A DNA stretch of 64,000 nucleotides from Malacoraja senta (lineage: Eukaryota): positions 14,384,001 to 14,448,000 of the forward strand of contig CM075986.1 in the NCBI GenBank assembly GCA_038087875.1, given 5' to 3'. Numbering within the stretch: position 1 is the first letter of the stretch; every line of letters starts with the position of its first letter. The translations under genes and the position numbers were made by a program. The notes beneath the pieces were generated by a model, which was given only the letters and a program-made list of their open reading frames with translations, searched no databases and was not told the origin of the DNA. Positions 5,116-63,034 of this stretch are shown piece by piece.

Positions 5116-5197
5116 ATTTAAAGATCACCCCATGTTAAACGACAGATATTTGCTATTATACCTTTTGGGAAGAGGAGGTTTTAGTGAAGTGTACAAG
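5116..5197 (+). CDS. TLK2: TLK2 coding exon, start of kinase domain with Gly-rich loop ([27 protein letters not shown])
   Basis: ttgcag acceptor, gtaagc donor; 82 nt; GRGGFSEV motif. Confidence 0.97.
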
Positions 5198-6045
5198 GTA
5201 AGCTCGACTGATAAATAAAGTAAGAGAAAATACAGAGTGATAAAGCAAGATTTCACTTGAATAAATGCATAAAGTATGAAATATTGGGGGGGAGTAAAAA
5301 AAAAATCCATTTCCAACAACTGTACAACACATATTTCAGTTCTTTATATGGAAACTACATATTGCCGCATCTGCTGTAGACTTACTCAACTGCACACCTG
5401 ACTGAGATCAGCCAAACACATTTCACGCAGGTCCTTTTGGCCAGCAGAGAGGACGTTTGCATCTATCCTTTTTATTTGATGTGATTTAACCATTTTTGCC
5501 ATAGTTATAACTTTAGCAGACAGGTTCCTCTTTTCATTGATAGCTGAGCATTGGTTTTATAATGATAATGGGAGCGTGATTTGTAGCAGGGTGGTGTACT
5601 AAACAGGTCATCGCTCTCCCGGTATACTGCCATTGCTTATTGTATCTCCCTCCATTGGTCAGGTGAGAGCAAAGCTTTTGCGCTATCATGGTTCAGGGAA
5701 TTTGAAAAATATTCTATTGTCACCAGTAGACTGACACTCCAAATATAAGGCTACATGTGGAATTTTTAGTTCTGGCAATTTAAACGAGGTTAATTATTAA
5801 CTATAATTTCAGTTATTTTACTCTATTTTAAGGGAAAGAATAGAAGCAAGTAGTTAGAAATGGAAATCGGCTTTCTAATGCTAAACCGCCTTTTCTCAAG
5901 GCTCTCATAACGAACTGCAGTGTCTATACATGAGAGGTTGTGCTGTGAACCTAGCTCACTTCAAAGAGCCTTTTTGGAAATTTGCAAAATGTGCTACAGA
6001 TCAGGTACTGCCAGATGCACCCAAACAATAGGAAGAGGGCATATA

Positions 6046-6257
6046 CAGTGGCTTGGAAAAGTATTCATACCCCTTGAACATTTCCACATTTTGTCACGTT
6101 ACAACCACAAACGTAAATGTATTTTATTGGGATTTTATGTGATAGACCAACACAAAGTGGCGCATAATTGTGAAGTGGAAGGAAAATGATACATGGTTTT
6201 CAAATGTTTTTACAAATAAAAAACTGAAAAGTGTCGCGTGCAAAAGTATTCAGCCCC
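6046..6257 (+). repeat. Left TIR of the Tc1 element, with outer and inner direct repeats (AAAAGTATTCA core)
   Basis: Reverse complement of 7451-7662 with about 7 mismatches by manual alignment. Confidence 0.95.
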
Positions 6258-6424
6258 TTTTACTCTGATACCTCTAAATAAAATCCAGTGCAACCAATTG
6301 CCTTCAGAAGTCACCTAATTAGTAAATAGAGTCCACTTGTGTGTAATCTAATCTCAGTATGAATACAGCTGTTCTATGAAGGCCTCAGAGGTTTGTTAGA
6401 GAACATTAGTGAACAAACAGCATC

Positions 6425-7444
6425 ATGAAGCCCAAGGAACACACCAGACAGGTCAGGGATAAAGTTGTGGAGAAGTTTAAAGCAGGGTTAGGTTATAAAA
6501 AAATATCCCAAGCTTTGAACATCTCACGGAGCACTGTTCAATCCATCATCCGAAAATGGAAAGGGTATGGCACAACTGCAAACCTACCAAGACATGGCCG
6601 TCCACCTAAACTGACAGGCCGGGCAAGGAGAGCACTGATCAGAGAAGCAGCCAAGAGGCCCATGGTAACTCTGGAGGAGCTGCAGAGATCCACAGCTCAG
6701 GTGGGGGAATCTGTCCACAGGACAACTATTAGTCGTGCACTCCACAAATCGGGCCTTTATGGAAGAGTGGCAAGAAGAAAGCCATTGTTGAAAAAAAGCC
6801 ATAAGAAGTCCCGTTTGCAGTTTGCCACAAGCCTTGTGGGGGACACAGCAAACATGTGGAGGAAGGTGCTCTGGTCAGATGAGACCAAAATTGAAGTTTT
6901 TGGCCTAAATGCAAAACGCTATGTGTGGCAGAAACCTAACACTGCACATCACCCTGAACACACCATCCCCACTGTGAAACATGGTGGTGGCAGCATCATG
7001 CTGTGGGGATGCTTTTCTTCAGCAGGGACAGGGAAGCTGGTCAGAGTTGATGGGAAGATGGATGGAGCCAAATACAGGGCAATCTTGGAAGAAAACCTGT
7101 TAGAGTCTGCAAAAGGCTTGAGACTGGGGCGGAGGTTCACCTTCCAGCAGGACAACGACCCTAAGCATACAGCCAGAGCTACAATGGAATGGTTTAGATC
7201 AAAGCATATTCATGTGTTAGAATGGCCCAGTCAAAGTCCAGACCTAAATCCAATTGAGAATCTCTGGCAAGACTTGAAAATTGCTGTTCACAGACGCTCT
7301 CCATCCAATCTGACTGAGCTTGAGCTATTTTGCAAAGAAGAATGGACAAAAATTTCAGTCTCTAGATGTGCAAAGCTGGTAGAGACATACCCCAAAAGAC
7401 TTGCAGCTGTAATTGCAGCGAAAGGTGGTTCTACAAAGTATTGA
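6425..7444 (+). CDS. Tc1-like DD34E transposase, 339 aa, uninterrupted
   Basis: Paired-like HTH N-terminus, GRPP linker, basic RKPLLKKSHKKSR segment, WSDE / QQDND / SPDLNPIE catalytic motifs; 34 residues between second D and E (counted). Confidence 0.97.
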   Translation: MKPKEHTRQVRDKVVEKFKAGLGYKKISQALNISRSTVQSIIRKWKGYGTTANLPRHGRPPKLTGRARRALIREAAKRPMVTLEELQRSTAQVGESVHRTTISRALHKSGLYGRVARRKPLLKKSHKKSRLQFATSLVGDTANMWRKVLWSDETKIEVFGLNAKRYVWQKPNTAHHPEHTIPTVKHGGGSIMLWGCFSSAGTGKLVRVDGKMDGAKYRAILEENLLESAKGLRLGRRFTFQQDNDPKHTARATMEWFRSKHIHVLEWPSQSPDLNPIENLWQDLKIAVHRRSPSNLTELELFCKEEWTKISVSRCAKLVETYPKRLAAVIAAKGGSTKY

Positions 7445-7450
7445 CTCAGG

Positions 7451-7662
7451 GGGGCTGAATACTTTTGCACGCGACACTTTTCAGTTTTTTATTTGTAAAA
7501 AAATTTGAAAACCATGTATCATTTTCCTTCCACTTCACAATTATGCACCACTTTGTGTTGGTTTATCACATAAAATCTCAATAAAATACATTTACGTTTG
7601 TGGTTGTAACGTGACAAAATGTGGAAAATTTCAAGGGGTATGAATACTTTTGCAAGCCACTG
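7451..7662 (-). repeat. Right TIR of the Tc1 element (contains sense AATAAA at 7580-7585)
   Basis: Inverted copy of 6046-6257. Confidence 0.95.
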
Positions 7663-8001
7663 TAATCCAGGCTTTTTCCAATGGGTTTAAGATTGTTCAG
7701 ACAAACACTCGTGAATGATCGGCAACTGGAACAAGTCACACAGCTGAAGAGAAGACAGTGGATTTAAAAGACTATAGAGTAGTGCAGAGAGGATCTTGTG
7801 GGAGGGGAAACATATTTCTATCACAAGTGGACAAAGAGTCTAACCCAAATAAGCAGTCATTTCACTCATTTCTATGTGGTGAGATTTTTAAAGTGTCTTA
7901 AATACTGCATTAAGATACTTGTTATTTGCTGTTGATGCCATTTCTTCAAGTTTTGCCAGTTAAAAATAAAAATAAACTCTGCTTTAAAACCTTTTCAATA
8001 G

Positions 8002-8094
<93 letters not shown>

Positions 8095-8529
8095 TAAGTA
8101 CTAGCCTGAGTTTACATTAGAATTCTGATGCTATCCAAACTTCACCAGTGAATCACCAGTGATTTTTCGACTAATATTTTTAGGAGGGTTACTGCCTGAG
8201 CTTTTTTGATCGTGTGCATCCCAAAGATGAACTAGTTGGTAGGTTAACCAGCCACAGTAAATTGCCCCTCAAGTATAGCTGAATGATAGAGGTGGAGGGG
8301 TTTGATGGGAATATGGAAAGAACAAAATAGGAGCATGGTGGATGGTGTGGACTTAGTGGGCTGAATGGCCTGCTTCTCTGCTCTCGATATTTCTAAAAGG
8401 AGATCTTGTTAAATCTACTCTGCTGGAAAGTTGATCCAAAAAAATCCTTTTCTAAACAGCATCCGAAAGCATCCACACGCAGCAATGTGATGCAAACATA
8501 TAATCTGTTTAAGATCATCACTTAACTCT

Positions 8530-8950
8530 CCTCCACACCTCCCCATGCTCCTATTTCCCACTCTTCTGTTACCATCTGCCACTAGCCCTCCTTATTTAAG
8601 TTCATTCATGATCATTTTGTCCTATCAGATTCCATAATCTGCTGCCTTTTTCTTCACATCACCTCAGCCTCTGCTCCTATCTCCCACCCTTCGCATCCCC
8701 TACCTGACCTTTACTTGCCAATCAACCCCTCCTTACCCCTCCATCAATTGCTTAGTAGATTTTTCCCATCCTTCTGCCTTATCACTATACTAACTACTTC
8801 CCCTCTACTCTATTAGTCCTGATGAAGCATCCCAACCCGAAATGTTGACTATTCGTTTTCCTTCTCAGATGCTGAACTACTGAGTTTTTACAGCAACTCT
8901 TTTTCTTTGCTCCAGACTCCAGCAACTCCAGCACTCTATTGTGTCTCCAT
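8530..8950 (+). mobile_element. Old Penelope-like element 3' terminus with hammerhead-type core at 8814-8851
   Basis: Pyrimidine-rich tract, then tagtc-CTGATGA-(13 nt)-GAAA-TGTT-gacta, then the family cassette gatgct...tgagtt...ccagca. Confidence 0.6.
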
Positions 8951-9794
8951 CTGTTTTAGACTATTGCCTGAGTAAATCAAAGAACATTGAGAACTGTCTT
9001 TACAACAGCTCTGTGGAATCTATTATATCCATGAGAAGGCGGGCAGGCTGTGGCTTTCATGTCTCATCAGAAAACCATCATTGCTGATTGTGTGGCAATA
9101 TCAGTATTCCAGTACTGCATTGGATTATCGCTGATTAAGTCTTCAAATTTCTAAGTACAATCTGAAACTACAATCTTTTCACTCTGGCATGAATGTTACG
9201 AGTGAGCAACTGAAAAAGGAGAATGAAAATTACAAGTCACGTCCCATTAAAAGTTACAGATTGTATGGTTTTGATTGTAGTTCTTAAACTTGCTATATAC
9301 TTATTGCCATTCAGATGTTGAAACAGTGACTTTTTGGCTCTCGGTACAAATAAAAGATATCACTGATTTTGCACATTTTTATGGTTCATTATACAAAAAC
9401 CTCTATCAAAACGTTATTCTATTCCTTTGTGCTACGTCGGGGTTCCCAAAGGTTTACATGAACCAGTTACTCATATCGATTCTTTGCAATTGCACAGTGA
9501 CATATTTGCTTTGCCTGCTTCTCACTTTCACAGTTAAGAGAGCAAAAGAGTTAAACCGTCAGATATTGAATACCGCTCACAATCTCAGGATATTCCGAAG
9601 GCAATTTTTTAAAGAATGCCTGGCTTTATAATGAGGGAATTTATCTGGTTTCGGATAGTTCTTGGCGTGCACACCATTAATTATTATTATTTTTTTAACT
9701 TTATATTATGTTATGCTCCTGGGAAGAAATTTGACCTTGGAACATTCTGAATGCAATGGCTTATTCGCAAACAGAACGGGAGGTGATTTTGGTA

Positions 9795-10090
9795 CAGGCA
9801 ACCCCCACATTAAGGCGGTTTGGGTAACAGAAAGTGAACCGTAGATAATTTACAAATCACAACCCAAAAATTTGAGACATGAAATAAAATTTGCTCTCAT
9901 AAAATTTGTGAAACAAAGTAAGTACAAAATTTAGATTGAGATACACGGAAAAACAATATCTTCAACACTCGTTTCTTCATGCATGTGTGGATGATGCAGC
10001 TTTGTATTATGGAAAATGGCGAAATGGGCCGTTTTCTGAGAATGCAACCACACCACCCCCATCGCCCTCCTGCAGCGTAGGGATTGTCTG
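9795..10090. mobile_element. Degenerate Tigger-like MITE
   Basis: TA|CAGGCAACCCCC ... GGGATTGTCTG|TA imperfect TIRs. Confidence 0.55.
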
Positions 10091-11710
10091 TAATCAATTG
10101 GTGATTTCTAGAAAATAGCAATATATCTTGAATTCAATCATAGTCTTGCCATATGTCTGCTATATTGTGATATATGTTGCAGTTTAATTTCTACAACATA
10201 ACTTTATTCCCCCAGGCTCAGCCAATTAAATTCAAAGCGGGTTTATGAGTTGGTATCTATTAAGGGATAGAATGATTCTTCAAGCATATCTTTTTAATTA
10301 TTACTTGAGCATTAAGTGTCTTCATTTTTATTTATTTAGGCTAGTGGTCTCTTTGATTCTGCATTATTTTGCTACTTAAGGAAAAAGTTTTGGTTGAGCA
10401 CCAAGAGGCACATAAAATACTTGAATTATTACCTGCCACCAGCTGTTAATCTGTTATGAGCAGCAAAATAAGTTAGATTTATGTTCTTTAGAGTTCCGAC
10501 GAATGAGGGATAATCTTGAAACATTAGGGGATCCTGAGGGGTCTTGACAAGGTAGATGTCAAGATGTTTCCACTAGCTGGATAATCTGAAACAAGGGAAC
10601 ATAGTTGCAAGAATATGGAGCAGTTATGCAAAACGGAGGAATCTTGAAATTTCATACGGATGGTGATAATCTTTTCAAAAGTACTATCATTAATGTATTT
10701 TTAGAAAAATGGTAATGAATTGTGAAACAAAAACAGAAAAGCTGGGGAACACAGCCATTTGAGGAAGGGTCCCTGACATGAAACATTGACTGGTTTCTCT
10801 TTCCACAGACTGGTCGACTGGCTGAGTTCTTCCAGGATTTCTGTTCTTGTTTCAGATTTGCAACAACTATAGTTTTGTTTGTTTCCCATTCAATGACTTC
10901 TGTTATATGGACATCTGGAGTCTTGGTAAAGCAAAATCACATCTGGCTGGTGATTAGATTGATGCTTTAATTGATCATTTACCTTGCTTTGCTATCCATT
11001 AATTCGAGCCAAAATGGGAGCAGTTCTAGGTCAAATGCTCTTTAGCAGTACACATTGATCATCATACTTGTATCAAACACACCAAGTATTTCTGCTGCCA
11101 TTACCTTTTAGCATAGTCAGATGTAGACCACCCAACTCATGGATAAGATTTTTATTTCTAAACCTTATTACCAATTCCTCTAGACATTGTTTTTTCTTCT
11201 AAAGCAAATGGGTCCTTCCCTTTCACTCTTAGAATTATCTTCATGTCTTTTAAAATTCTCCATAAATTGGCCAAATCCAACCACATTGTGGGCACTGCCT
11301 TCAAATTGCTGTCACCCAACTACACTTTCAATTCACCCAGGCTTATTCTCTAAATCTATTGATGTCAACCTTTATCGTGCTGGATTTGCTGTATGATGAT
11401 TAGATTTGCTGTATGAAGATATTTTATGAACACTAGGTCTTTAAACCTTTTAAATCATCATTAGCAATGTTAAACCTGCACAATTCACATTATTTTTCAA
11501 TTCACCTAAGATATTCTCCACGTTTATTTGTTACATTTTGGATATGTGCACACTATGGAAGAATGAAATTATAGAGATTATCTCCTGTTTCTTGATGCAT
11601 AAAACATCTTAATACTGTTCAGAGAAGGTTAATTGTCTCATTATTAGATTTGTTAAATTTTACTACAGCAGTCTGAGCTGGTTGTCTAATGTTGCTGATT
11701 TTGTTTTCAG

Positions 11711-11800
11711 ACATGCCTGCAGAGAATATAGGATTCACAAAGAATTGGATCACCCAAGAATAGTCCGACTCTACGATTATTTCTCATTAGATACAGACTC
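11711..11800 (+). CDS. TLK2: TLK2 coding exon ([30 protein letters not shown])
   Basis: tttcag acceptor, gtaagt donor; 90 nt. Confidence 0.97.
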
Positions 11801-13337
11801 GTAAGTTTCTGTCTTCATTTAGAGTGAGATTTTGTATATCTGTAGAATAAGCTTGTCCTGCAGCCCATTGAAGTGTAGGGGCACTGGCACTGCTATGTCT
11901 GGGCTTCACTCACTGTTAGAATTGCATGCTGATGTTGAATATTCCAAATGAATTGAGTTTCATAATGCTTATAACAGCATGAATCAGAAAAATATGATCC
12001 TTTAAGAGGATGTGAAAAAATATTAGCTGACACAATGTTTTAATCAGCTTTAAATCTTTTATTGCCGCGGTTAACTAATGGTTGTAAAAGTACAAATTGC
12101 CCTACTTGCATGTTGAAGTCAAAACAATCTGCTGTAAGGATCCTTTACAAAAGGTTAGCAAAGGTTGCACAGTTTGTTGCATTTCAGAAGTGAAGTAATT
12201 GAGTTGGGTGTTATTGCACGCGTACTGAGGTACAGTGAAAGTGAAAAGCTTTTGTAGCGTGCTGACCAGTCAGCAGAAAGACAATACCTGATTACAATCG
12301 AGCCACCCACAATGTACAGATACATAATGAAGGGAATAACGTGAATAACATTCAGTGCAAGATTAAAGATAGGCCGAGGCTCTCCAATGAGTAAAATAGT
12401 AGCTCAGGACTAGTTGTCATAAATAATATAAAGTACATAAAAGAATAGTTACATAAAGTGCTCGCTGTAAAGGGGGCTTAGGAAAACATCCAGGTAGACT
12501 GAGCACTAAACCAGTTTTGTTGAACTAGCTTCTGCTTAATAACATTAGGCCATTTGATGTCGTTATAGTAATACAACACGGAAACAGGCCATTCAACCCA
12601 ACTCATTTTGCTGAGCATGAAGCCCATCTAAACTAGTTTCAATTGTCCACATTTGACCCCTATCCTTCTAAACCTCTTCCATTTCATGGAGCTATCCGAA
12701 AGCAGAGTGACCAAACTAAATACAATGCTCCAAATGCAACCTCACTTGGTCTTATTCCACTGCAACATAACATGCCAACATCTAACCCCTGACTGTTAGA
12801 GAACAGTTTGTTAAAAGCCACCTTCGCAGCCCTGATCACCTGTGATGCCATGTTGTATGAAAAATTTTCATAGTTGGAAAATCCAGCAGCATGATTTTCA
12901 TTTGTGCCTTCCCAGCCTTGCTGAGGTTTGTAACATTTCTTGCTCCCAATAGACGTTTCAAAGATCACCAGGCCAGGCATTTCAGCTGACAAACTAAACT
13001 TTTGTGAGGAAAAAGAATATTAATTGAAGATGACTATCTTGCATTTCCATCAATGCATTGTTTGCTTGAATATTTAAGTCGAGCATCATCCAGCCTCTGA
13101 AATGTTTAATTAATTCTATACTTGGGGTACATTCTATTGGTTTGAATATCTCTCACTGATCAGAGTGAAACATGGGCAATACGATAGCTGTGAAATCATG
13201 ATATATAAGATCTGATTCACAGGTATGGGAAAAGATAATGGATAATGTATATGGTGTGATCCAGCTGATTCCAAATGAAGAAGCAGATGTCATTAAAATT
13301 CTTCTAAGTGGGTTTTAAAATGTGAGATTTGTGATGA

Positions 13338-13544
<207 letters not shown>

Positions 13545-14039
13545 TGACCAAGGTTAATATTGGTAATTGGCATTAATGCAGAGTATGACTGGGGATATTA
13601 GTTTCATACACTAGTCTAAATGCTTTACAGTTAATTTATTCCAGAAAATAGCAATATTACAGTAATTTCTATAACAATTGTAAAAGGTTACTAATGTTTG
13701 AATAACAACCATTTCTATTAACTGTACAGGAATAAGTGTTGGGGGAATTTTTTTTTACAAAGATTGTTCTCTATAATTGCTCTATCTTTAAATTCCCTAC
13801 GGATAAGATTTCAAATATAAACTTGAGTTATACTTGCCTAATGCAACACTTTTGCAAATGCAAATGAAAATAAAGATGAGATGAAGAATGAAGGTTAAAA
13901 CTTCATTCTAGTGTAATTATTCCAAGACTCGTGAAAGAAAAGACTGATGGTTGGGGTGAGGGGAATTGGTAGGATGAGGGTGAAGTTCCATATGCCTCTG
14001 AACCTTTCCTATCAATGTACCTGTCCAGTATCTTTTCAA

Positions 14040-14224
14040 AAAGCTGGAGTAACTCAGCGGAACAGGCAGCATCACTGGAGGGAAGGAATGGGTGACATTT
14101 CGTGTCACGACCCGAAATGTCACCCATTCCTTCTCTCCAGAAATGCTGCCTGTCCCGCTGAATAACTCCAACTTCTTGTGATTATCTTCGGTTTAAACCA
14201 GCATCTGCAGTTCCTTCTTACTCG
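14040..14224 (+). mobile_element. Palindromic PLE-terminus insertion inside a CR1 remnant
   Basis: TSD gtatcttttcaa at 14028-14039 and 14225-14236; inverted arms; ends ccagcatctgcagttccttc. Confidence 0.75.
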
Positions 14225-15034
14225 GTATCTTTTCAATGTTGGTATTGTACCTGCCTCTACCACTTTGTTCGGCAGCTCGTTTCATCCGCACACAACCCTC
14301 TGTGGGGAGAAACCTGCCCCTTCGATCGCTTTTTAAACCTTTCCCCACTTTCTTTAAACCTTTAAATTTGGACTGTTTTAATCTGGAGGGGAAAAGGTAG
14401 ATATTCATGTTTTACCCCTGCCTTTCATTTTATAAACCTCTACGGTTGGTTCACCCCTCCAACCCAGCCTCCAATGTTCCAGGGGAAAAAGTGTCCCCGC
14501 CTCTTCTTATAACTCAAACCCTCTCAACCTGATAACATCTTTGTGATTTTTTACATCCTATCCACAACAGTGTGACCAGAACTGTCACAGTACATCAAAT
14601 GTAATGTTGACAACGTCTTGTACAGCTGTAGCTTGACATCCCAACTCATATACTTATTTCCCCAATTGATGAAGGCAACAATGCCAAATGCCTCCTTCAC
14701 CACCCTGACTATATGTGTCGATGTGTCTATTTGTCTCTGTAGTTAAGCAGAAAACCTTAAGGGCAATCTTTGTTTTTTCAAATTCAATTACCATTTTTCA
14801 GATGACATTGAAGACATTATATAAAATAAGTGTTTTGAAATAAAGTTCATCGGAAGGAATGGGTTTTGAATGTAATTAAAAATGAATATTGCAGTTGCAC
14901 GAACTAGCAGTCACTGAAGCTACAATTGTATTACGATATTTTAAACATTTCTTGATCATCAAGTATTTAATTGTCATATGTGCTAAAAACTGAACAATGA
15001 AATTGATCATGTGTGGGGTTTAATGTTTTCACAG

Positions 15035-15173
15035 GTAACATTCTGCTGGTGAACGGGACAGCATGTGGAGAAATAAAAATCACAGATTTTGGATTATCTA
15101 AAATCATGGATGATGACAGTTACAATTCAGTAGATGGAATGGAGCTCACATCACAGGGAGCAGGCACATACTG
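15035..15173 (+). CDS. TLK2: TLK2 coding exon with DFG and activation loop ([47 protein letters not shown])
   Basis: tcacag acceptor, gtgagc donor; 139 nt; VNGTACGE and [10 protein letters not shown] fit TLK2 better than TLK1 as recalled. Confidence 0.97.
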
Positions 15174-15839
15174 GTGAGCTGGCGTTGAGATGCCTGTTGA
15201 CACTTCTCATTCAAGCTCAAGTGTTTGAAGCTGAAGTAGCTTATTAGACTGAAATCTAATATAGATTGCATGTAATTTTTTTTTGTTGAGCTTGAAATGT
15301 CACTTACTGCCCTTCATGAGGCACTGCCTGAATTTTTTCTGTACCATTATGAACCATGACAGCAGGCGGCAAAGAATATTGTTAATGCTATGGTAAGGTG
15401 AAGCCTGACGTGATCAAACTAAATTATCATCAAGAACATGAAGTGACTTCATGTTGACTGCTTTTTTCTTTCTAAAACACATCATGAATATTTCATTTGG
15501 CTTGGTGTGATGCACAGCGTCAATCTGGGCTGGAACCTTTTAGCAACAGAGTGCACCAATTATATATTTGAAACCAGCCTAGGCTGAAAAGTCCTTTTAT
15601 TAGACACGTTCATTTGATGCCAGTTTTTTTCAGAAGAGCTGAACAGGTGCTTCCTAGGGCACTGAAAGAAATAGTTGAAGATGTCAAATTTCAAGGCTGG
15701 GATTTCCAAATTCTTATTGTATATAGTCTCCTATGTTCATATTTTTCAAAGAGTTATTGAAGGGATCTTAAAAGAGTCGACAAAGGAGAAAAGTTGTTGG
15801 GATTTAGGCTAGGAAATTTACTTAAAAGTTAGATCCCAT

Positions 15840-16230
15840 TGAGTATGATGGATTTCATGAATAGAATTGTCATGGTGAAATCCCATTTTATAAAATTTTG
15901 TTTAGGCTGCATTTGAAGTATTCTGTACAGTTCTGTTTGCCCCATACAGGAATAATGTGGAGGCTTAGGAGTGGGCACAGATGAGGGTTACCAGAATGCT
16001 GCTTGGATTAGAGGGTATTACCTAGAAGGAGGTTGAACAAACATGGATTGTTTTCTTTGGAGTGTCTGAGATTGAAAGGAGACCTAATAGAAGTATATAA
16101 AGATGAGAGGCATAGATAGGGTAGACATTTTGAACCTTTATCCCAGGATGGAAATATGAAATATTGCATAGCTTCAAGGGAAGAGGAGAAATGTTTGCAT
16201 TTATGGGGATAGTAATGAGGAGGGAGCATT
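15840..16230 (+). mobile_element. CR1 LINE ORF2 3' remnant
   Basis: Degenerate CR1-type sequence (cagttctgtttgcccc...gagacctaatagaagtatataaagatg); boundaries approximate. Confidence 0.7.
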
Positions 16231-16528
16231 TAGATTGTCCTCGTGTCACCAGCAGTTAGTGATTTTTGTTTTTATTTTTTGGAGATGGATCATGGAAACT
16301 AGCTGAAAATTGGGACAAAATTATTTTTGCTTTTAATGAATCTTTTCCACTATCACACTGCAGTTCTTTTTTATCCCACCTGTTCTTTTGAAGTAATATT
16401 AGTGCCCACTGGTAGAAGTTTTATAGTGCATGTGTTGATGAATTACTTTTGTTTTCTTCCATAGTAGTCCTTTAGCACATTGAGCCTGTCTATTGTTTGT
16501 ATTGTTTGCCACAGAAATGGTAACTTAA

Positions 16529-16798
<270 letters not shown>

Positions 16799-19259
16799 TG
16801 AGTTACTCTTGTTTTTCAGTTCCATGGTTGATTTGCACACTTACTGACATTTTAACAGTCAAGATATAAACTGACCTTGAAATCTGGGACTGTTGTCAAG
16901 AAATCAATTCTTTGTACATTGATGAGGGGAATAAAGACACTTTTACTTACATGACTAAATTATGTTTTTTCATATGCTTAATCCTGAGGTGAGGCTTTGC
17001 ATATATAAAATCTTTACTCCTTTTCCATTATTTCTTGACCTGTCCTTGCTTCCCCATTACCCACGAGATCATGTAATCCTAGTATTGTTCACCTTTGTTA
17101 TGTTCAGACCTGTGCCTATGAATGCTGCAGCAGAGTGTTTGTTGTACACTGACAGTGACAATGCCATTGTGACTACCAATGACTACCACCGGTCAGTGCT
17201 GGCTCGAAGGGCCGAATGGCCTACTCCTGCACCTATTGTCTATTGTCAGTATAGTTTGTTCTTGGGCAGATGTGGCTCTGGACTTTAGCCAAAGATCAAA
17301 GTGGGTCCTGAGTTTCAAATGTCCAGGTGCCAGGTCAGCATTTGTTAGGCTCTGGGCAGTGGCAGGTAGTGGGTTAGGGGATGGAGCAGAAATGAGGAAA
17401 CAGGGTGAAGGTCCATTTCAGCTGTAGCCTCCAGGGTGCTTCTGACCACCTTGCACTTTTATTCCGTGAAATCTGCCTGATGATGTTATGAGCCATTCCT
17501 TTCAAGATATCAGTGCTGTCCTGGGGATTCCAGCATATATCCCATATCCTCTTGGTTTTACAGAAAAATTGCTTCTTTGTATTAAAATTCAGTGGGACAG
17601 CAAATCTTCCATTTGGATGCAAGAAGCCTCATGCCATTCTAAACTGTTGGCAACTTTAAGGTCCCTCAACAGTTTCAAGATTCCCATTAACCTACTCCTG
17701 TATCACCCTGTGCTTGTCTTGCACTAGTTAACTTTACCAAAGTAAATTCCAATTGCCACATTGATATCCACTTAACCAATCCATTGATCCCTTTCTGTAA
17801 CACAGAACTCTCATTCTCGGCATCAATCGCACTGCCAATTTTGGCATTAACAGAGTTCATCAAGAATCTTTTGTTTGCCCAAATTGTGAATATACCACAA
17901 AAAGCAAAGGTGCCTAGAACTGAGATCTGCTGAATTCCAAACCACACAGCCCTCCATTCCTTAAACTCTAGTCACCCAATATCCTAATCCTAATGTTGTT
18001 ATACTTTTTCCTATTTTACACCAGACCCATCCCTTTTTCTGGTGTACATCATCTGAAACACCTGTACTCTTGCCCATCTTTAAGCTATGTTTCAGTAAGG
18101 GCCATTGTTCAAGGTGAAATAAAGGCAATGAACCAAGGGAACCAATATGTTACAGTATGACTAATTAGGCACTGCCAAACCACTTCGTTTCTTCAGGCTT
18201 CCAAATTCATTGCTTTGCTTAGCAGGCTCATTGGGTAAACCTTTACGATTCACATCCAGTTTTCTGTACTTCCTTCTGAAATTATGGTTGGTTCCCATTC
18301 TCTTGCCACGCTGGTTTAAATTCTTCCAACTGCATGCAAAATCCCAAACCTGGCTCTGTTGATGTCTGGCTGTGCAGGTCCAGCTATTATTCTTCACCAT
18401 TTTCTTGTTGAATTTGTATATTTAGCCACGCTGCTTGATGCAGTAATACAAATTTCGCAAATACTGGAGTAAATTGATATTGACAGAAAATATAAACATT
18501 CAAATTGGTGAAGTATCCTTTTTTGTCATGGTGGTAAGTGTGTAAAATATGCAAGATTTACTAAGGTGTAATATGTTCTAAATAAGGTGAAATTTGCCAT
18601 TTTCCTGGAGAAAGGGTATAATCGGAAAGCTGAAGAATAGCCAGGTCTGATGAAGACCTCTCGTACAGGGCTCTGGTTCTCTTTCAAACTGATGGTTCTG
18701 CATTATACAAGGTTGGGGTTAAGAGCAGAGGAACAAATCTTCAATTGATTAGTTTCATATTTAGCCCTTTCTCCAGGATTGGTAAATTTTACCTTACCTA
18801 AAGCAACTTATACCATGTCTTACTAAATCTTGCATATTGTACACACCAGTACGATATAAAAGGAAACTTCTCCACCTTGAATGATTATGAACAATGACTG
18901 ATTTTGGTTTCTCCATATGAGACGCTAATGAATAAAGAACTGGAAAGACAACATAAAAGTGCGATATTATTCTCTCCTCCTTAGTAGAATTGATTAAAGG
19001 CAAATAATTAGCGAGTGCTTCTGGAATCTGTTTCACTTGTAGCCGTGTTTGAAGTTTGGCGGGCCGAGGTTCTTAAATTTTGAGTGCTTAAAAAATATTT
19101 GGCTTCATGTGAAGTTGTTTTTTTCAAATATCCCAAATGAGAAAGAGGAAAGCGAGTGCATTAAGCATTCACTGTCTTTCCACCATGTAGTTCATGGATT
19201 GGTACACGTTAGCTGCTGTTTTAATCTCTGGTGCTCACCTTTCCTTCTCCATTTCATAG

Positions 19260-19367
19260 CCATTTGGTCACAATCAGTCACAACAGGATATTCTTCAGGA
19301 AAACACAATTTTGAAAGCCACGGAGGTGCAGTTTCCACAAAAGCCAGTGAACAGTGCAGAAGCAAAG
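19260..19367 (+). CDS. TLK2: TLK2 coding exon ([36 protein letters not shown])
   Basis: ttcatag acceptor, gtaagg donor; 108 nt. Confidence 0.97.
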
Positions 19368-19744
19368 GTAAGGCTATACAGTCAAAGGCTATTAATAATA
19401 TTGCTATCAGACCACCTATTTTTTTGTATTTTATAGTAATAAATAATCCATTTTAAATGTAACCACAGGTTTTGCTGTGCTTGCTAGTAGCATCTTGGCC
19501 TCAATATAATGAGATGTGTGTGTCTGTGATCTTGTAGCCACTGTATGGATAAGAAAAAATGTTGGGGGATATGGGCCAAATGCAGGCCAATGGAACTAGC
19601 TTAGATGGGCAGCTTGAACGGAATGGATGAGTTGGGCTGAAGAGCTGTTTCCATGCTCTATAACTCTAACGTTTATTTTCTATGAAGGGGAATCATATGT
19701 ATGCATCTCCTGCGCATTTTTCAGGAATACAATTATTTTTTCAA

Positions 19745-20100
19745 CTGACGATAGCTGTTCCTTGATAAGAGGAGAGAGGAATGCAGAATCTCTTGCCCAG
19801 AGTAGGGGAGTCGAGGACCAGAGGACATAGGTTCAAGGTGAAGGGGAAAAGATTTAATAGGAATCTGAGGGGTAACTTTTTCACACAAAGGGTGGTGGGT
19901 ATATGGAAGAAGCTGCCAGATGAGGTAGTTGAGGCTGGGACTATCCCAACTTTTAAGAAACAGACAGGTACATGGATAGGATGGGTTTGGAGCGATATGG
20001 ACCAAGCACAGGCAGGTGGGACTAGTGTAGCTGGGACATGTTGGCTGGTGTGGGCAAGTTGGGACGAAGGGCCTGTTTCCACTCTGTATCACTCTATGAC
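19745..20100 (+). mobile_element. CR1/HER1 LINE 3' end
   Basis: ORF 19781+ reads ESRTRGHRFKVKGKRFNRNLRGNFFTQRVVGIWKKLP (CR1 C-terminal motif); tail gaagggcctgtttcc...ctctatgactat. Confidence 0.85.
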
Positions 20101-21010
20101 TATAAGAATATGCCAGGGACTGGACAAAGAGAACATTTATTTCTTCACCATGTTTTGATGCATTATTCTTCTTGAAGCTCAGACATAACTAATCCAAGCA
20201 GTTGGATTAACTTAATCCACTGTGCCACTAGGATATCTGAATCAGTGGATGCAATATTATTGATTTTTTTCTTTGACTGGTAACTTCGTAGAGTAATTGT
20301 TTTTTATAAACTTTAATCATAATCATACTGAGGTATGTGCTTTGTGAGGCAAATGTGATGAAAGGCTTGAAAGTTACACCTGTATTACTCAAAATAAAAA
20401 TGGCCAGTCACGTAATGCATAAAAAAATTATGATTTATACGGTTGGTATAAGTCTGAGAGTGATTGGGGCATGAGTAAATTTAAACATTAAATCATTGAA
20501 ATTTATGGGGCAGTAAAAAGCAATTTGATTTTTTTAAAGGATGTATTTGTTTTAAATTAAAAAATTGCATGGAAAGGAGTAGTTTCTCATAATGTGTTAG
20601 TTATACTTGAGCAGAGAGCTGATTTGAACATGATATTGATGCTTGTATTTCACAAAGGGACAATATCTGGTCCTGCAGCCTGGCATCGATAAATAGTTCC
20701 ATAGTAAATCTTTTATGGAATTGGTGTCGGTACCAAAAATTGTTGTTATGGCATAAAAGATGCGATGAGAAATAATGAATTTATAAGCTGGAGTATCTGA
20801 ATAATGATAGCTTAGTGCCTTATTTGAACTTGGGAAAGTTAACGCTGTATTGACCTGTAAAACCTATAAATCATTGGCATAATATTTGCTGCACATATCT
20901 TTATCTACATTAAATTAGCTGGCTTGGATGCATTTTCTGTTATATATAGAGAGAATTACAAGTACTTTTACTATATTACATAAATTATTTTTTCTTTTAT
21001 TTTGTTGCAG

Positions 21011-21178
21011 GCATTTATCCGACGCTGTCTGGCATATCGTAAGGAGGACCGGATAGATGTTCAGCTACTTGCCAGTGACCCATACTTGATGCCTCATATA
21101 AGGAAGTCAGTGTCCAGTACCAGTCCAGGTGTGGTTGCCTCAACATCTGGATCATCAAATAACAGCACTTCAATCTGA
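21011..21178 (+). CDS. TLK2: TLK2 terminal coding exon ([55 protein letters not shown])
   Basis: ttgcag acceptor; TGA at 21176-21178; Ser-rich tail of TLK2 type. Confidence 0.96.
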
Positions 21179-29574: not shown

Positions 29575-30000
29575 TTTGTAGAAACAAATAACTCCAGATG
29601 CTAATTTATGCCAAAGATAGACACATAGTGCTGGAGTAACCCTGTGGGTCAGGCACATCTCTGAAGAAAAAGGATGGGTGATGTTTTGGGTCGGAACCCT
29701 TCAGACTGAAAGTAGGGTAGGGGGTGGGGGTGAAGAGCTGGAGGCGACAAAAGACCAGGATCAATCAAGGCTGGCAACTAATGACCTTGGACAGGGTGGT
29801 GCCATGGTAGACCCATTGTTGGTGAGGGAAGGTGTGATCTCAAGTAAGAATTTAATTGTTCCGTCTGGGACATATGACGATAAAACACTCTTGACATTGT
29901 GATGAACTGGTTAAAGAACTAGGGTGGAGGAAGGGAGCAAGTGGGGAGGGGAGTGTTGGTAGAAGTTGCTTAAAATTAGAGAATTTAATGTTCATAACAA
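29575..30000 (-). mobile_element. Penelope-like element 3' fragment (end of endonuclease ORF, purine tract and terminal cassette)
   Basis: Same terminal cassette on the minus strand; cttaaaattagagaatttaatgttcata resembles the reverse complement of the ORF end at 34200-34238; boundaries approximate. Confidence 0.6.
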
Positions 30001-31164
30001 GATTGTGAGCTCTTTGTCTTGTTACTCCACTGTAGATATTATTGTTCTGCATTGCCCTTTTCATTAAACAGCTTATGCTCTCACAAAATCTCCAGTTGTA
30101 TCTCTTAACCAGTTGATACCACCTCAATAGATGGCATACGCTCTCATAGATGGCACAAGCAGTGGAAAACCAATGTCGTCTCTCTACATGCAACTGGTGT
30201 CATTTGCCAGCATCAAAGTTGAACAAGAGTCTCCCGAGTCACGTTAGTGCATTAACACACCTGACCTATGATCTTTGAAATGAAATTGAATGAAAACATG
30301 TCCAGTACAAACACTCCCAATATTCTACAAGAGTGTAATGGGTGGAAAGAATGAAAAGGGAAAATTGTTCAAACTGTCACCAATAAAAGAGACAAATCCA
30401 ACAATGGACTACCTGGAGAACCCATCTGCACAACATCCAATTAGAAAATAATTGGTATTGTTCATGGTGGTTTGAATTATCTTTCTTCGTTCATTTTTAC
30501 TACTCGTTGGGCATCTATCTCTTGTATCTAATGTGACTAATTCCTATATAATACGGCCCAGTGTGAAGAAGAAATAAACTCTCGGCGTCCTGCTCCGAAT
30601 AATCCATGCTCTTATCTGCCCAGCATCACACCCATTGCTGAGTGGTTCGGGGTAATTCTCTGCAGGTACACCATGGATTCCAGAAACCTGTTACCCCGCA
30701 CCTATGCCCAACACGTCAGTGAAGTCTGAACCCTATTGAGTTAGAGCCTTTCTTATGGCTGTGCTGCTAGAAATGTCCCCCATCTATTTAGTGTCCCAGC
30801 AGGTGAGGCTGTAACTGTAACCTGGCGTTTTATTGACATGAGTGGCAAAGTGATGCCGGGCGGAGATGAGAGATTACAGATGATGGGATCTTGAACAAAA
30901 CACAAAGTGCTGGAGGAACTCAACGGGTCAGGCAGCAGCTGGGGAGGGGGACAGACCGACGTTTCGGGTCGGGACCCTTCTTCTAAAGCTTGACAGTCGA
31001 CACTGGTTGCAACCCACCAGCAAACAAAAAGAGGGTGTAAATGTGGCCAGTGGCCTCATTGCAATCAAACACCGTAGGCACAAACTGCACGACCATCCGC
31101 TGCCAATTGCTGAGATTCTGCCTGCCTTCACACACAGCTGTTGGATGCAATTGCCTCGTGGCCA

Positions 31165-31187
31165 TTATTATTATTATTATTATTATT
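31165..31187. repeat. (TAT)n microsatellite
   Basis: Directly visible. Confidence 0.9.
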
Positions 31188-31269
31188 GAAAGCAGATTTT
31201 GCTCCTGCATTAAAAAAAAATTAACGGGGGAGGTAATTTGCATTGTGAGAGAGTTTTTAAAAAAAATTG

Positions 31270-31720
31270 CAGAGGAGGCGGCTGGTTGTGCGGGAGCAGG
31301 GTGGAGTGTCGGTGGGGGCTGAGCAGCGGCGCCCCGCTCTCTGCTGACGCACGCTGCCTGCCTCTCCTCTCCTCTCCTCTCTCTGCTCTCCGCTCCCACC
31401 CCGTGCTCAGTCCGAGGCGGAAGGGGCTCCGCTCGCATCGGAGCCGCGTCCCACTCTGTTCCTCAGCTTCCCCCCCCCCCACCCCTCCAGCCAGCCAAAC
31501 CAGCCAGCCATGGGCGCTCGGCCCGCCGCCAGCCCCCGCTCGCCGCCCTCTGCCTTCTGCTAACTCTCGGCTCCGCCAACTCAGGTGAGAAGGGAGAAAG
31601 TTTTCATTCAGACTTTCCGCTGCCTGCCCGACTAACGGGGAGGAGAGAGGAGAGCGGGCTGCCGGCTTCCTTTATCTCCTCCAGGGCGCTTCTGATCCCA
31701 CTGGCGCCCACCCTGGGGTC
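31270..31720 (+). promoter_or_regulatory. MRC2: GC/CpG-rich promoter and 5'UTR of MRC2
   Basis: The most GC/CpG-dense tract seen in the window; surrounds the signal-peptide exon. Confidence 0.75.
31510..31584 (+). CDS. MRC2: MRC2 exon 1 (signal peptide MGARPAASP[P]LAALCLLLTLGSANS); one base short as assembled
   Basis: Strong Kozak gccATGG; hydrophobic LAALCLLLTLG lies in a shifted frame; cag|gtgaga donor; adding one C to the C5 run at 31533-31537 gives 76 nt (phase 1), matching exon 2. Confidence 0.8.
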
Positions 31721-31845
31721 ATTTGATGCTCCCTCCATTAAGCTTTACTAAAGTTTTGTCCTGGTTTTATTTTGTATGTGGAATGGGGTTGGTTTAATGG
31801 CTGTAAACGGAGCAGAAGGAATGTCCTGAACTGAGTGAAAACAGA

Positions 31846-31866
31846 TGTGTGTGTGTGTGTGTGTGT
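31846..31866. repeat. (GT)n microsatellite
   Basis: Directly visible. Confidence 0.9.
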
Positions 31867-32539
31867 ATATATAGGGGGGAGGGGAAGAGACTTTAGGGGG
31901 TGATGGTAGGAGGGGGAGTTGAGGGCGAAATGTTGCAAAGATTTGCACAGACGGTTCTTTAATAGGATTGTGTTTGCGGTCTGCACCCTGTGTAATACAC
32001 ATACATTATCTGGCACCCACCCCCTCCCTGACTCCTCGCTCAGCCCCTTGCTGTGTACCCCTGTAAAGGGGAGGGGATGAAGTCGGCGGGCAGGAATGAT
32101 TGGGCAGCAGGGAGCTGATTGTGTGGCTCTGCGGGGCTCCTGTACAAATGGATTCTCCCTCTGCTCCCAACTGTTCTCACTGTGAACTGTAGTGGGATTC
32201 CCACTTGGGAGTGGGCCGGTGAAAGATTGGGAGAGGGAGTTCCATCTCGGTGGGACGGAGATGAAGTTGAATTTCCATACCGGCGGGTTTGAAGCGAAAT
32301 CCTGTGGTCTTTTCTGTCGTGTGGAGGCAGACACTGCATTTTTGGCACCAGTGAAGTGACAGGATGCAAAAATGTCATCACTTGTAATTGTATTTTGGGG
32401 GATGTTTCTGGATATTAATCTGGTGGTTTGCCTCGTGGCTGTCTAACTGGAGCAAATACTGGATTTTCCCAGAACATGCATCTGTGGAGAGAGAAACCAA
32501 GTCGCTGTTTCTGAATAAATGACCTTGCATCAGGACCTG

Positions 32540-32742
32540 TTTAAGAAAGAGCTGCAGATGCTGGAAAAATCGAAGGTAGACAAAAATGCTGGAGAAATTC
32601 AGCGGGTGAGGCAGCATCTATGGAGCGAAGGAAATAGGTGACGTTTCTGGTCGAGACCCTTCTTCAGACTGAAGAAGTCTATTCCTTCGCTCCATAGATG
32701 CTGCCTTACCTGCTGAGTTTCTCCGGCATTTTCTGTCTCCCT
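32540..32742 (-). mobile_element. Palindromic PLE-terminus insertion with back-to-back hammerhead-core starts (ttcttcagactgaagaa)
   Basis: 15-bp TSD ttgcatcaggacctg at 32525-32539 and 32743-32757; minus strand CTGAAGAagggtctcgaccaGAAACGTC at 32640-32667. Confidence 0.85.
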
Positions 32743-32780
32743 TTGCATCAGGACCTGAACTGTGTGAATGTTTTCCAACG

Positions 32781-32984
32781 GAAGATGGGCACAGAATGCT
32801 GGAATAACTCAGCAGCTCAGGCAGCATCACTGGAGAAAAGGAATATGCGACGTTTCGTGTCGAGAAGGATCTTGATCTGAAACGTCACCTATTTTCTCCA
32901 GAGATGCTAGCTGAGCGGCTGAGTTACTCCAGCATTTTGTGTCCATCTTCGGTGTAAACCAGCATCTGCAGTTCCTTCCTGCAC
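32781..32984 (+). mobile_element. Palindromic PLE-terminus insertion
   Basis: Imperfect TSD gtgaatgttttccaacg / gtgaatggtttcccatg; inverted arms. Confidence 0.75.
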
Positions 32985-34037
32985 GTGAATGGTTTCCCAT
33001 GCAAGGCGAGAACCTTGTCCTTTGCCTGCAGGTGGTAGCTGGGCTCAGCCACCAGCTAATGAAGAAAAACGACAGTGTCTATTTGCTGCCCTGCCTCAAG
33101 ATGTTCCAGCGTATATTCAACCCATACTTTAAATTTGCAGTCACCATTGCAACATAGGGAACAGCAGCCAAATGACATGCAGCACGCTCCTACACACAGC
33201 AGAGCGACAATGGCTGGATAATATGTTTATTGGTGTCGGTGAGGAACAACCAGTTTAGTTTATAATCTCCAGCTGCATTAGCCACTGTAGATTCACCATG
33301 GGTGTGAGGATAAGTGGTAGAATCAGAGTTTAGTTTAGTTTATTGTCACGTGTACCGAGGTACAATGAAAGGCTTTTGTTGCATGCTATAACCAACCAGT
33401 CAGTGGAAAGTCAACACATGATTAAAGCTATTGGCCAGGGCACTGGGTTGAACTCGCCAACATTCCGCACTTGAGGGGGGATAGTCAGTGGTCCTGAGTT
33501 TAATTGTGGGGATCAGACTTTTTTTAATTTCTGCACCGTCTTCATTTGTTTTCTTTTATTCCACCCCCGCCATTCCCTATTAATTGTAAACGATGCGTGA
33601 AATCTATTCATTTCCAGAATTCCCACCCACCCCCACATTTCCTTTCGGTTTTGATAACCTACGGTCCAGAATATGTTGTAGCCAGGATCCTGTCTCAGTG
33701 GTTCATTGTCACGGGGACGAGGAACAGTTGCGGATGAGGTAGCTGAGAATTGATCCAGTGGTGCTCTGACGTGGTGTGGCTGCAGAGGCAATTGCAGAGG
33801 AGGAGATTTTTTTGGAACCATCTGTTGCAGAAAATGCACACTCCCTTGTGTCGGTGTATATGCAGACTCTTAGTCTCGTTGGAAATAGAAGCGGGAACCA
33901 GTACCGCAGCTGCACGCCACTGTCCTACCACCTTATTCCTTGGTTACTCCAGATTCCAAGACCCACTCGTGGCAATGATGGTGGTGTACACACTGTGGGG
34001 TTGGTGGATTGCACATACCCGTGGTGGGGAACACAAG

Positions 34038-34700
34038 TTTGTAGGAAGGCGCTGCAGATGCTGGTTTAAACCGAAGATAAACACAAGAAGCTGGTTCCCA
34101 CACTGACCTTTCAGTCCTGGGCCTCTCCCATTGTCAAAGTAAAGGCCAAACACAGATTGGAGGAACAGCACCTCGTATTTTCCTTGGGTAGCTTACAACC
34201 CAGCGGTATTACTATTGATTTCTTTAACTTCAAGTAATTNNNNNNNNNNNNNNNNNNNNNNNNNNNNNNNNNNNNNNNNNNNNNNNNNNNNNNNNNNNNN
34301 NNNNNNNNNNNNNNNNNNNNNNNNNNNNNNNNNNNNNNNNNNNNNNNNNNNNNNNNNNNNNNNNNNNNNNNNNNNNNNNNNNNNNNNNNNNNNNNNCTCT
34401 CTCTTCCCCTCTCCCTCTCTCTCTTCCCCTCTCTCTCCCTCTCTCTCTCTCCCCTCCCACCCAAGTCATTGCACTAGTTTCAAAGTCGACATGTTGAAAC
34501 TCATTTTCACGAGCCCACAGCTAACAATGCCGTTTCATTGTCATAACGTTTTATCGTCGTTACTTGTCTCTCTGTATCACTGTCCATATCTCTTTTCCCT
34601 GACTCTCAGTCTGAAGGGTCTCGACCAGATACGTCACCTATTCCTTTTCTCCAGAGATGCTGTCTGACCCACTGAGTTACTCCAGCTTTTTGTGTCTCTC
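34038..34700 (+). mobile_element. 5'-truncated Penelope-like element: inverted terminus, GIY-YIG endonuclease C-terminal remnant, CT tract and terminal cassette
   Basis: 34096-34238 translates with a frameshift to SHTDLSVLGLSHCQSK...HRLEEQHLVFSLGSLQPSGITIDFFNFK*; TSD gtggggaacacaag / gtgaggaacacaag. Confidence 0.75.
34240..34396. other. Assembly gap (157 N) adjacent to a CT-rich tract
   Basis: Run of n. Confidence 1.
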
Positions 34701-62662: not shown

Positions 62663-63034
62663 ATGCCAATGTATTTCTGGTGTACAGCGAGAAAGCGAGG
62701 AGTTGCCTGGAGAGCCGGGGTTCCAGCGTGGCACTGGCCCTGATCTGCAACGAGAGCTCCAGCCACCAGCAGTGGAAATGGGTCTCCAGGCTGCGTCTCT
62801 TTAACCTTGGATCCGAGCAGTGTCTGAGCACCCAGAGGAAGAACGAGACTACACCCACCCTGGGCATGACCGTGTGTGATCAGGAGTCCGCCCAGATGCG
62901 ATGGCATTGTAACAGTCTAGGCAATCAGCTCAACAGCATTCTGAATCTGCAGTCTGAAGCCGGCGCCTCAGGGCCTGAGGACCTGTGGAGGATATACAAC
63001 ACCAATGACGACCTGTGCTCTCGACCCTATCATG
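62663..63034 (+). CDS. MRC2: MRC2 (Endo180/uPARAP) exon 2, cysteine-rich ricin-B-type domain; the gene continues beyond the window
   Basis: tttgcag acceptor, gtaagg donor; 372 nt, phase 1-1; (D)ANVFLVYS..CLE..CNES..QWKWVSRLRLFNLGSEQCL..CDQE..RWHC..WRIY..DLCSRPYH with six Cys matches human MRC2 as recalled; synteny with TLK2. Confidence 0.93.

What the first reader, a model, noticed from the sequence alone, without database searches (positions are those of the whole stretch)
6046..7662. Complete, potentially mobilisable Passport-like Tc1 transposon in an elasmobranch TLK2 intron
Seen: TA target duplication, 212-bp IR/DR TIRs with only ~7 mismatches, and an uninterrupted 339-aa DD34E transposase. 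It sits among otherwise decayed TEs, so the insertion looks recent. Knowledge (recalled, not searched): the protein closely resembles Passport, a natively active Tc1 element from flatfish, and Tc1 elements are known to move horizontally among aquatic vertebrates. Inference: recent horizontal acquisition by a cartilaginous fish, and a candidate native gene-transfer tool. A few residues (KWKG, TSLVG, VWQK, AKGL) may be private mutations in this copy.
Basis: partly seen in the sequence, partly recalled or inferred. Interest (0 to 1): 0.72.

Follow-up and report, generated by a model that had tools for sequence, protein, structure and literature searches.

The report
Passport-like Tc1 transposon in skate TLK2
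This is a complete copy of a very abundant Passport-type "cut-and-paste" jumping gene sitting in an intron of a cartilaginous fish's TLK2 gene; the family looks horizontally acquired, but this copy is about 1% decayed and is an ordinary example of a known kind.

Summary
Window 6046-7662 is a 1617-bp Tc1 element with TA duplications and 212-bp IR/DR inverted ends (7 mismatches). It has an uninterrupted 339-aa DD34E transposase, by far the longest ORF in the 64 kb.

It is Passport-like. It is 86% identical in DNA to a plaice copy and groups with the plaice, cichlid, Xenopus, bichir and salmonid transposases. It is not ZB.

It lies in sense orientation in a 2.8-kb TLK2 intron, with MRC2 downstream. 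The host fits an elasmobranch.

It is one of a very high-copy family (roughly 10^4 by read depth). The scan has already noted at least ten other near-intact copies elsewhere in this genome.

With a fifth, they give E47G, H137L, R169Q, D231G and A308T (family majority to this copy). Three of them hit near-invariant positions. The left outer binding site also carries a private change.

The copy is about 1% from the family majority, with a neutral pattern of change. Both sampled individuals carry both junctions. So it is probably a fixed, somewhat aged copy, not a fresh insertion.

Horizontal transfer of the family is well supported: dS is 0.10-0.27 against teleost copies. The donor, direction and date are unknown. 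Verdict: a new member of a known kind.

The parts
6044..6045 (.). left TA target-site duplication
   Evidence: Sequence. The inverted repeat extends to 6044/7664.
6046..6257 (+). Left 212-bp terminal inverted repeat (IR/DR). The outer binding-site repeat is about 6046-6075 and the inner repeat 6233-6260. There is a private G at 6056 inside the outer repeat.
6258..6424 (+). 5' untranslated leader between the left TIR and the start codon
   Evidence: It is 91-98% identical to the leaders of related copies.
6425..7444 (+). Transposase ORF, 339 aa plus stop. PAI HTH 1-51, GRPR-like motif (GRPP) about 57-60, RED HTH 68-136, lysine/arginine-rich NLS-like stretch about 117-130, DDE domain with D152/D243/E278.
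7451..7662 (-). Right 212-bp terminal inverted repeat. The inner repeat is 7446-7475 and the outer repeat 7631-7662.
7663..7664 (.). right TA target-site duplication
5116..5197 (+). Upstream host exon (TLK2 kinase glycine loop, ...[12 protein letters not shown]), with a GT donor at 5198
   Evidence: The motifs were recalled from memory of TLK2, so this is a lead-grade identification.
8002..8094 (+). Downstream host exon ([17 protein letters not shown]...), with an AG acceptor at 8000-8001

Best explanation
This is a structurally complete copy of a young, very high-copy Passport-like Tc1 element (DD34E transposase, IR/DR ends). It inserted by cut-and-paste at a TA, in sense orientation, in a 2.8-kb intron of TLK2 in a cartilaginous fish, probably a skate. 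The family moves as Sleeping Beauty and Passport do. The N-terminal paired-like HTH domain binds the outer and inner repeats in each 212-bp end. The DDE domain excises the element and re-inserts it at TA. This mechanism is inferred from homology and was not shown here. The family is too close to copies in teleosts, and apparently in amphibians, to have been inherited vertically since the cartilaginous/bony fish split. It therefore entered one or both lineages by horizontal transfer. This particular copy has since drifted neutrally by about 1%. It keeps an open frame but carries five private replacements, three at near-invariant positions, and a change in the left outer binding site. It appears fixed in the animals sampled. 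Its own transposase may be weakened. The element could still be moved in trans by other intact copies.
For: Anatomy and domains. SB100X catalytic domain match, E 1e-86. Passport clade: SH-aLRT 98 for the 15-member clade and 97 with plaice as sister. DNA identity is 86% to the plaice copy L004, 91.5% to the Pangasius djambal copy L005 (including left TIR and leader), 89% to the Acnodon copy L006 (including right TIR), and 95.2% over the full length to ENA contig L003. dS is 0.036 with dN/dS 0.88 against L003, which is neutral drift between copies. dS is 0.10 (Pangasius), 0.22 (Acnodon) and 0.27 (plaice), with dN/dS 0.26-0.51. Reads: two samples of organism A each have error-free contigs running from unique flank into both element ends. 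Summed depth inside the element is 2e5-1e6 against 4-25 in the flanks. 6031 of 12817 laid contigs are at least 99% alike. A second organism, B, has the same family. Private changes. Host.
Against: Host identity rests on one named shark hit (70%), on earlier unverified agent reports and on TLK2 motifs recalled from memory; run organisms are coded. No host-gene dS was computed, so saturation over about 450 My is taken from general knowledge. The summed contig depth is explicitly not a copy number. Only 15 of 49 joints were listed, so an empty allele cannot be excluded. No activity or expression data exist for the source organism. Copies compared across species are single genomic copies, not family consensuses, which inflates dS somewhat; this is conservative for the transfer argument.
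Confidence: 0.78

Rival explanations
1. This very copy is a recent, currently autonomous element: its own transposase is active and it is newly inserted.
For: Open 339-aa frame with an intact DDE triad, all domains, complete ends and TA duplications.
Against: There are about 15-19 private substitutions (about 1%), with 5 replacement and 3 silent in the ORF. H137L, R169Q and D231G hit positions held by 36/37, 30/37 and 31/37 relatives. A private change lies at 6056 in the left outer binding repeat. The insertion is present in both samples, and no empty site was listed.
Confidence: 0.15
2. Vertical descent: the family has been in jawed vertebrates since their common ancestor and is simply well conserved.
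For: Transposase comparisons between species show purifying selection (dN/dS 0.26-0.5).
Against: dS is only 0.10-0.27, and non-coding leader and TIR identity to teleost copies is 87-91%. Copies within a genome drift neutrally (dN/dS 0.88), so they would not stay alike for hundreds of millions of years. The tree mixes bichir, cichlid and frog on very short branches. The Passport paper reports the family absent from zebrafish and from the other ENSEMBL genomes it searched.
Confidence: 0.04
3. Assembly artefact or contaminating teleost/amphibian DNA.
For: Near-identical family sequence occurs in runs of several other coded organisms and in amphibian-labelled RNA samples.
Against: Contigs from two independent samples run without a mismatch from the unique TLK2 intron into both element ends. 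The intron keeps its GT/AG borders, and the TA duplication is exact.
Confidence: 0.01

Closest known systems
Passport (PPTN) of plaice, Pleuronectes platessa (PMC2651795)
   Same: Both are IR/DR Tc1 elements with TA duplication. Lengths are 1626 vs 1617 bp. The terminal sequence TACAGTGCCTTGCATAAGTATTC compares with TACAGTGGCTTGCAAAAGTATTC here. ORF start is MKTKELT vs MKPKEHT, and the ORF ends GSTKY in both. Identity to a plaice genomic copy is 86% nt, and to plaice protein P0013 it is 86% aa over 94% of the query. The plaice sequence is sister to the clade holding this element.
   Different: 14% DNA divergence, with TIRs only 79% alike. The host is a cartilaginous fish. The copy number is far higher than the 200-300 reported for plaice. 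Activity is untested.
Eagle/Glan subfamily of Passport-like elements (Xenopus tropicalis, pufferfish, stickleback, medaka, salmonids; PMC2651795)
   Same: The window's transposase sits inside the clade with the X. tropicalis, Oreochromis, Polypterus, Lepisosteus and Oncorhynchus sequences, at 81-88% aa.
   Different: No named Eagle or Glan reference was available by reference, so subfamily assignment is not tested.
Sleeping Beauty (SB100X, PDB 5cr4)
   Same: Same domain order, IR/DR ends, DD34E triad and full-length catalytic-domain alignment, E 1e-86.
   Different: A different clade of DD34E/Tc1. The PAI domain match is much weaker, E 1e-6. SB is a reconstruction, not a native copy.
ZB / ZB-like elements, including ZB-like in the chimaera Callorhinchus milii (PMC7913693, PMC9777934)
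   Same: DD34E, about 1.6 kb, about 200-bp TIRs, TA. PMC9777934 places ZB in the same broad clade as Passport and documents one chondrichthyan host plus widespread horizontal transfer.
   Different: The ZB ends (cagcggggaaaataagtatttgac...) and the ZB protein start (MMGKNKELSQ...) are unlike this element. No ZB-bearing species named apart from Oreochromis niloticus appears among the 120 best protein hits.

Membership tests
Tc1/mariner superfamily, DD34E/Tc1 family | TA target-site duplication | tested here: met
   TA at 6044-6045 and 7663-7664
Tc1/mariner superfamily, DD34E/Tc1 family | DDE catalytic triad with 34 residues between the second D and the E | tested here: met
   D152, D243 and E278, read from the ORF in register with SB100X and DDE_3
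Tc1/mariner superfamily, DD34E/Tc1 family | N-terminal bipartite (PAI + RED) helix-turn-helix DNA-binding domain | tested here: met
   HTH_SB at 1-51 (E 2e-17) and HTH_Tnp_Tc3_2 at 68-136 (E 2e-24)
IR/DR group of Tc1-like elements (Izsvak et al., cited in PMC2651795) | Long (about 200-250 bp) inverted ends, each with an outer and an inner copy of a short binding-site repeat | tested here: met
   212-bp arms; direct repeats spaced 185 bp in both arms
Passport-like family (PMC2651795) | More than 80% nucleotide identity to plaice PPTN | tested here: met
   86.0% over 1458 nt to plaice genomic copy L004. L004 is a genomic relative of the cloned PPTN, not the clone itself.
Passport-like family (PMC2651795) | Transposase groups with the plaice transposase to the exclusion of other Tc1 clades | tested here: met
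   The 16-row clade has SH-aLRT 97. More distant Tc1 groups (Polyodon, Mastacembelus and others, 62-72% identical) fall outside it. SB and Frog Prince themselves were not in the tree.
Passport-like family (PMC2651795) | Transposition activity in vertebrate cells | not testable with these tools
   Needs a bench assay
ZB (Tc1-8B_DR) family | ZB-type TIR (CAGCG end) and ZB transposase sequence | tested here: not met
   The published ZB TIR and ORF start are unlike this element

The most novel reading that the evidence does not exclude
A Passport-like Tc1 family amplified to roughly 10^4 copies in skates after a geologically recent horizontal exchange with freshwater teleosts and/or amphibians (dS about 0.1). 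It still includes natively active copies. That would be a first documented elasmobranch partner in the Tc1 transfer network and a further native vertebrate transposase, though not necessarily this copy.
Probability: 0.3. Interest if true: 0.55.

Novelty: new member of a known kind. Interest (0 to 1): 0.38.

Why it matters
Horizontal transfer of Tc1 elements among aquatic vertebrates is well documented, and Passport and ZB already provide native active vertebrate transposases, so the kind is known. The possible additions are two. First, a cartilaginous-fish host with a very large, young Passport-like family. In the library searched, the only chondrichthyan reported for these Tc1 clades is a chimaera with ZB-like, and no paper describes Passport-like elements in skates. 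Second, a well-defined insertion in an essential kinase gene's intron that can be used to date the invasion by presence or absence across batoids.

Tried and rejected
- Exact-protein look-up of the window's transposase found nothing on record.
- I tried to name the host from a repeat-derived ORF (19781-20155). It gave 20 hits, none named.
- DNA for the Polypterus hit P0009 and the ENA hit P0039 could not be fetched because the files are too large.
- Literature searches for Tc1 or Passport in skates found nothing relevant. One search was a syntax error.
- ZB membership was considered and rejected.
- Using TIR left/right mismatch as an age measure was rejected, because Tc1 ends are not made identical at insertion. 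About 6 of the 7 mismatches are private changes and 1 is a family-level difference.
- I looked for an empty-site contig joining 6045 to 7663. None is among the 15 listed joints, and 34 more were not shown.
- The TLK2 exons are probably human-like. They were examined only locally, with short motifs recalled from memory, and were not sent to any search tool.
- The big representative-protein search was not used, because the protein was not left open.

Full report
**Observation**

TA (6044-6045) is followed by CAGTG at 6046. The element ends CACTG at 7662 and is followed by TA (7663-7664), giving 1617 bp.

The two ends are 212-nt inverted repeats with 7 mismatches. Each end holds an outer and an inner copy of a roughly 28-nt repeat spaced 185 bp apart. 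This is the IR/DR layout of the Sleeping Beauty/Passport group. The terminal 28-mer occurs nowhere else in the window, with 0 expected by shuffling.

The ORF 6425-7444 encodes 339 aa without a stop. It is the longest ORF in the 64 kb; the next is 198 aa. Pfam finds:
- HTH_SB at residues 1-51
- HTH_Tnp_Tc3_2 at residues 68-136
- DDE_3 at residues 148-299

Residues 112-339 align end to end with the crystallised SB100X catalytic domain, E 1e-86. The triad reads D152/D243/E278, so the element is DD34E. No second copy or fragment of the family lies in the window.

**Family**

The best protein hits are:
- unnamed run-assembly proteins at 90-91%
- Oreochromis niloticus and Pygocentrus nattereri at 88%
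- Pleuronectes platessa at 86%
- Xenopus tropicalis at 85%
- Polypterus senegalus at 84%
- Oncorhynchus at 81%

In a maximum-likelihood tree of 38 transposases, the window sits in a clade of 15 (SH-aLRT 98) with cichlid, frog, bichir, gar and salmonid sequences. The plaice sequence is sister to this clade (97). More distant Tc1 groups fall outside.

The Passport paper gives PPTN as 1626 bp. Its end primers and ORF-start and ORF-stop primers are very close to this element's sequence. [quoted passage not shown] The plaice genomic copy L004 is 86% identical over 1458 nt.

ZB, which PMC9777934 places in the same broad clade, has quite different ends and protein. This element is therefore Passport-like and not ZB.

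**Host and setting**

On the + strand the window carries a run of exons matching the TLK2 kinase domain as I recall it. They lie at about 5116-5197, 8002-8094, 11.7 kb, 13.4 kb, 15.1 kb, 16.6 kb, 19.3 kb and 21.0 kb.

The element lies in the intron 5198-8001, which has a GT donor and an AG acceptor. It has the same orientation as the gene, and with one TA makes up 1619 of the intron's 2804 bases.

Near the window's end, 62665-63033 is a ricin-type lectin exon of an MRC2-like gene. Its only named hit is a Chiloscyllium punctatum protein at 70% identity over the full length. An unnamed hit reaches 93%.

Earlier follow-up agents of this scan call the genome a skate. Run organisms are coded, so I could not name the species. 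An elasmobranch host is consistent with the evidence but only partly tested here.

**Copy number and state of this copy**

Contigs of two samples of organism A run without a mismatch from the unique flank into both ends (5260-6069/6070 and 7637/7640-7960). Both animals therefore carry the insertion. No contig joining 6045 to 7663 is among the listed joints, though 34 joints were not shown.

Summed word depth inside the element is 2e5-1e6, against 4-25 in the flanks. The tool warns that this is not a copy number. It nevertheless points to something of the order of 10^4 copies. That fits one copy in this 64-kb window and at least ten other near-intact copies noted by first readers elsewhere in this genome. 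A second organism, B, has the same family with a few fixed differences, but its run shows no flank.

Where nearly all family contigs disagree with this copy, the copy's letter is private. These sites are 6258, 6273, 6361, 6376, 6564, 6635, 6706, 6834, 6930, 7116, 7165, 7346 and 7629. Comparison with five related copies confirms seven of them independently and adds 6056 and 6206.

In the ORF this gives five replacements (family majority to this copy) and three silent changes:

| Change | Relatives keeping the majority residue |
|---|---|
| E47G | E in 18/37, K in 9/37 |
| H137L | H in 36/37 |
| R169Q | R in 30/37 |
| D231G | D in 31/37 |
| A308T | not tabulated (family majority from reads only) |

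This is a neutral pattern.

Position 6056 changes the conserved TTGCAAAAGTATTCA core of the left outer repeat. The right end, both inner repeats and the ends of L003 and L005 all keep that core.

About 6 of the 7 TIR mismatches are such private changes, and 1 is a family-level left/right difference. In total there are about 15-19 changes, or about 1%. At an assumed 1-2.5e-9 substitutions per site per year, that would be several million years. This is an inference, and the rate was not measured.

**Horizontal transfer**

| Copy compared | DNA identity | dS | dN/dS |
|---|---|---|---|
| ENA contig L003 (full length) | 95.2% | 0.036 | 0.88 |
| Pangasius djambal, catfish (L005) | 91.5% over 1377 nt | 0.10 | 0.51 |
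| Run-assembly copies L001/L002 | 92% | 0.145 | 0.29 |
| Run-assembly copy L007 | 89% | 0.17 | 0.26 |
| Acnodon oligacanthus, characin (L006) | 89% | 0.22 | 0.26 |
| Plaice (L004) | 86% | 0.27 | 0.26 |

Notes on individual rows:
- L003: the ratio indicates neutral drift between copies, as expected within a genome or between close relatives.
- Pangasius: the left TIR is 89% identical and the leader 91%.
- Acnodon: the right TIR is 87% identical.

An amphibian-labelled RNA sample holds a closely related family at high depth. Its longest contigs are 90-92% alike, and many short ones are at least 99% alike.

Copies drift neutrally once resident, and synonymous sites between cartilaginous and bony fishes are saturated (general knowledge, not computed here). 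Such values are therefore hard to reconcile with vertical descent. The tree also contradicts host phylogeny.

Horizontal transfer of the family is thus well supported if the host is indeed an elasmobranch. The donor, direction and date are unknown. Such transfers are already widely reported for Tc1 elements (PMC9777934, PMC3516227). The only chondrichthyan listed in PMC9777934 is Callorhinchus milii, with ZB-like. No paper in the library describes Passport-like elements in skates.

**Verdict**

The element is a real, complete, coding-intact Passport-like Tc1 copy. It belongs to a large, young, probably horizontally acquired family in a cartilaginous fish. This copy is an ordinary member of that family, slightly decayed and apparently fixed. 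Its own activity is doubtful, and it is not the best tool candidate in the genome. It is a new member of a known kind.

Noticed in passing
window 5116-21100 (+): Eight kinase-domain exons of a Tousled-like kinase (TLK2 by recalled sequence) on the + strand, with the last at about 21.0 kb. An MRC2-like ricin-lectin exon follows at 62665-63033 on the same strand. TLK2 next to MRC2 is, as I recall, the human gene order too.
   Followed up: partly
window 30000-34000 and 34240-34396: A G+C-rich stretch (0.48-0.49 against about 0.40 around it) between TLK2 and the MRC2-like exon, possibly a CpG-island promoter. It is followed by a 157-base run of N flanked by GA/CT-rich simple repeats. The N run was left untouched.
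   Followed up: no
window 19781-20158 (+): A 125-aa ORF from a dispersed repeat (...RGNFFTQRVVGIWKKLPDEVVEAG...), lying just downstream of a TLK2 exon. Its 20 protein relatives are all unnamed short metagenome or run contigs.
   Followed up: partly
protein P0055: A 339-aa protein named 'IS630 family transposase [Escherichia coli]' is 68% identical to this vertebrate Tc1 transposase and groups with Polypterus Tc1 copies in the tree. It is probably fish or vertebrate DNA contaminating a bacterial assembly.
   Followed up: partly
L003:3619-5259 (ENA ERZ25070917 contig): A full-length copy of the same family, 95.2% identical, with a frameshifted ORF and a damaged left terminus (TGGTG instead of CAGTG). 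It sits among LINE reverse-transcriptase fragments. The source organism is not known to me.
   Followed up: partly
window 7579-7590 and the mirror site in the left TIR: AATAAA motifs lie inside the TIRs of a sense-oriented element within an intron of an essential kinase gene. Whether they cause any premature polyadenylation of TLK2 transcripts was not examined.
   Followed up: no
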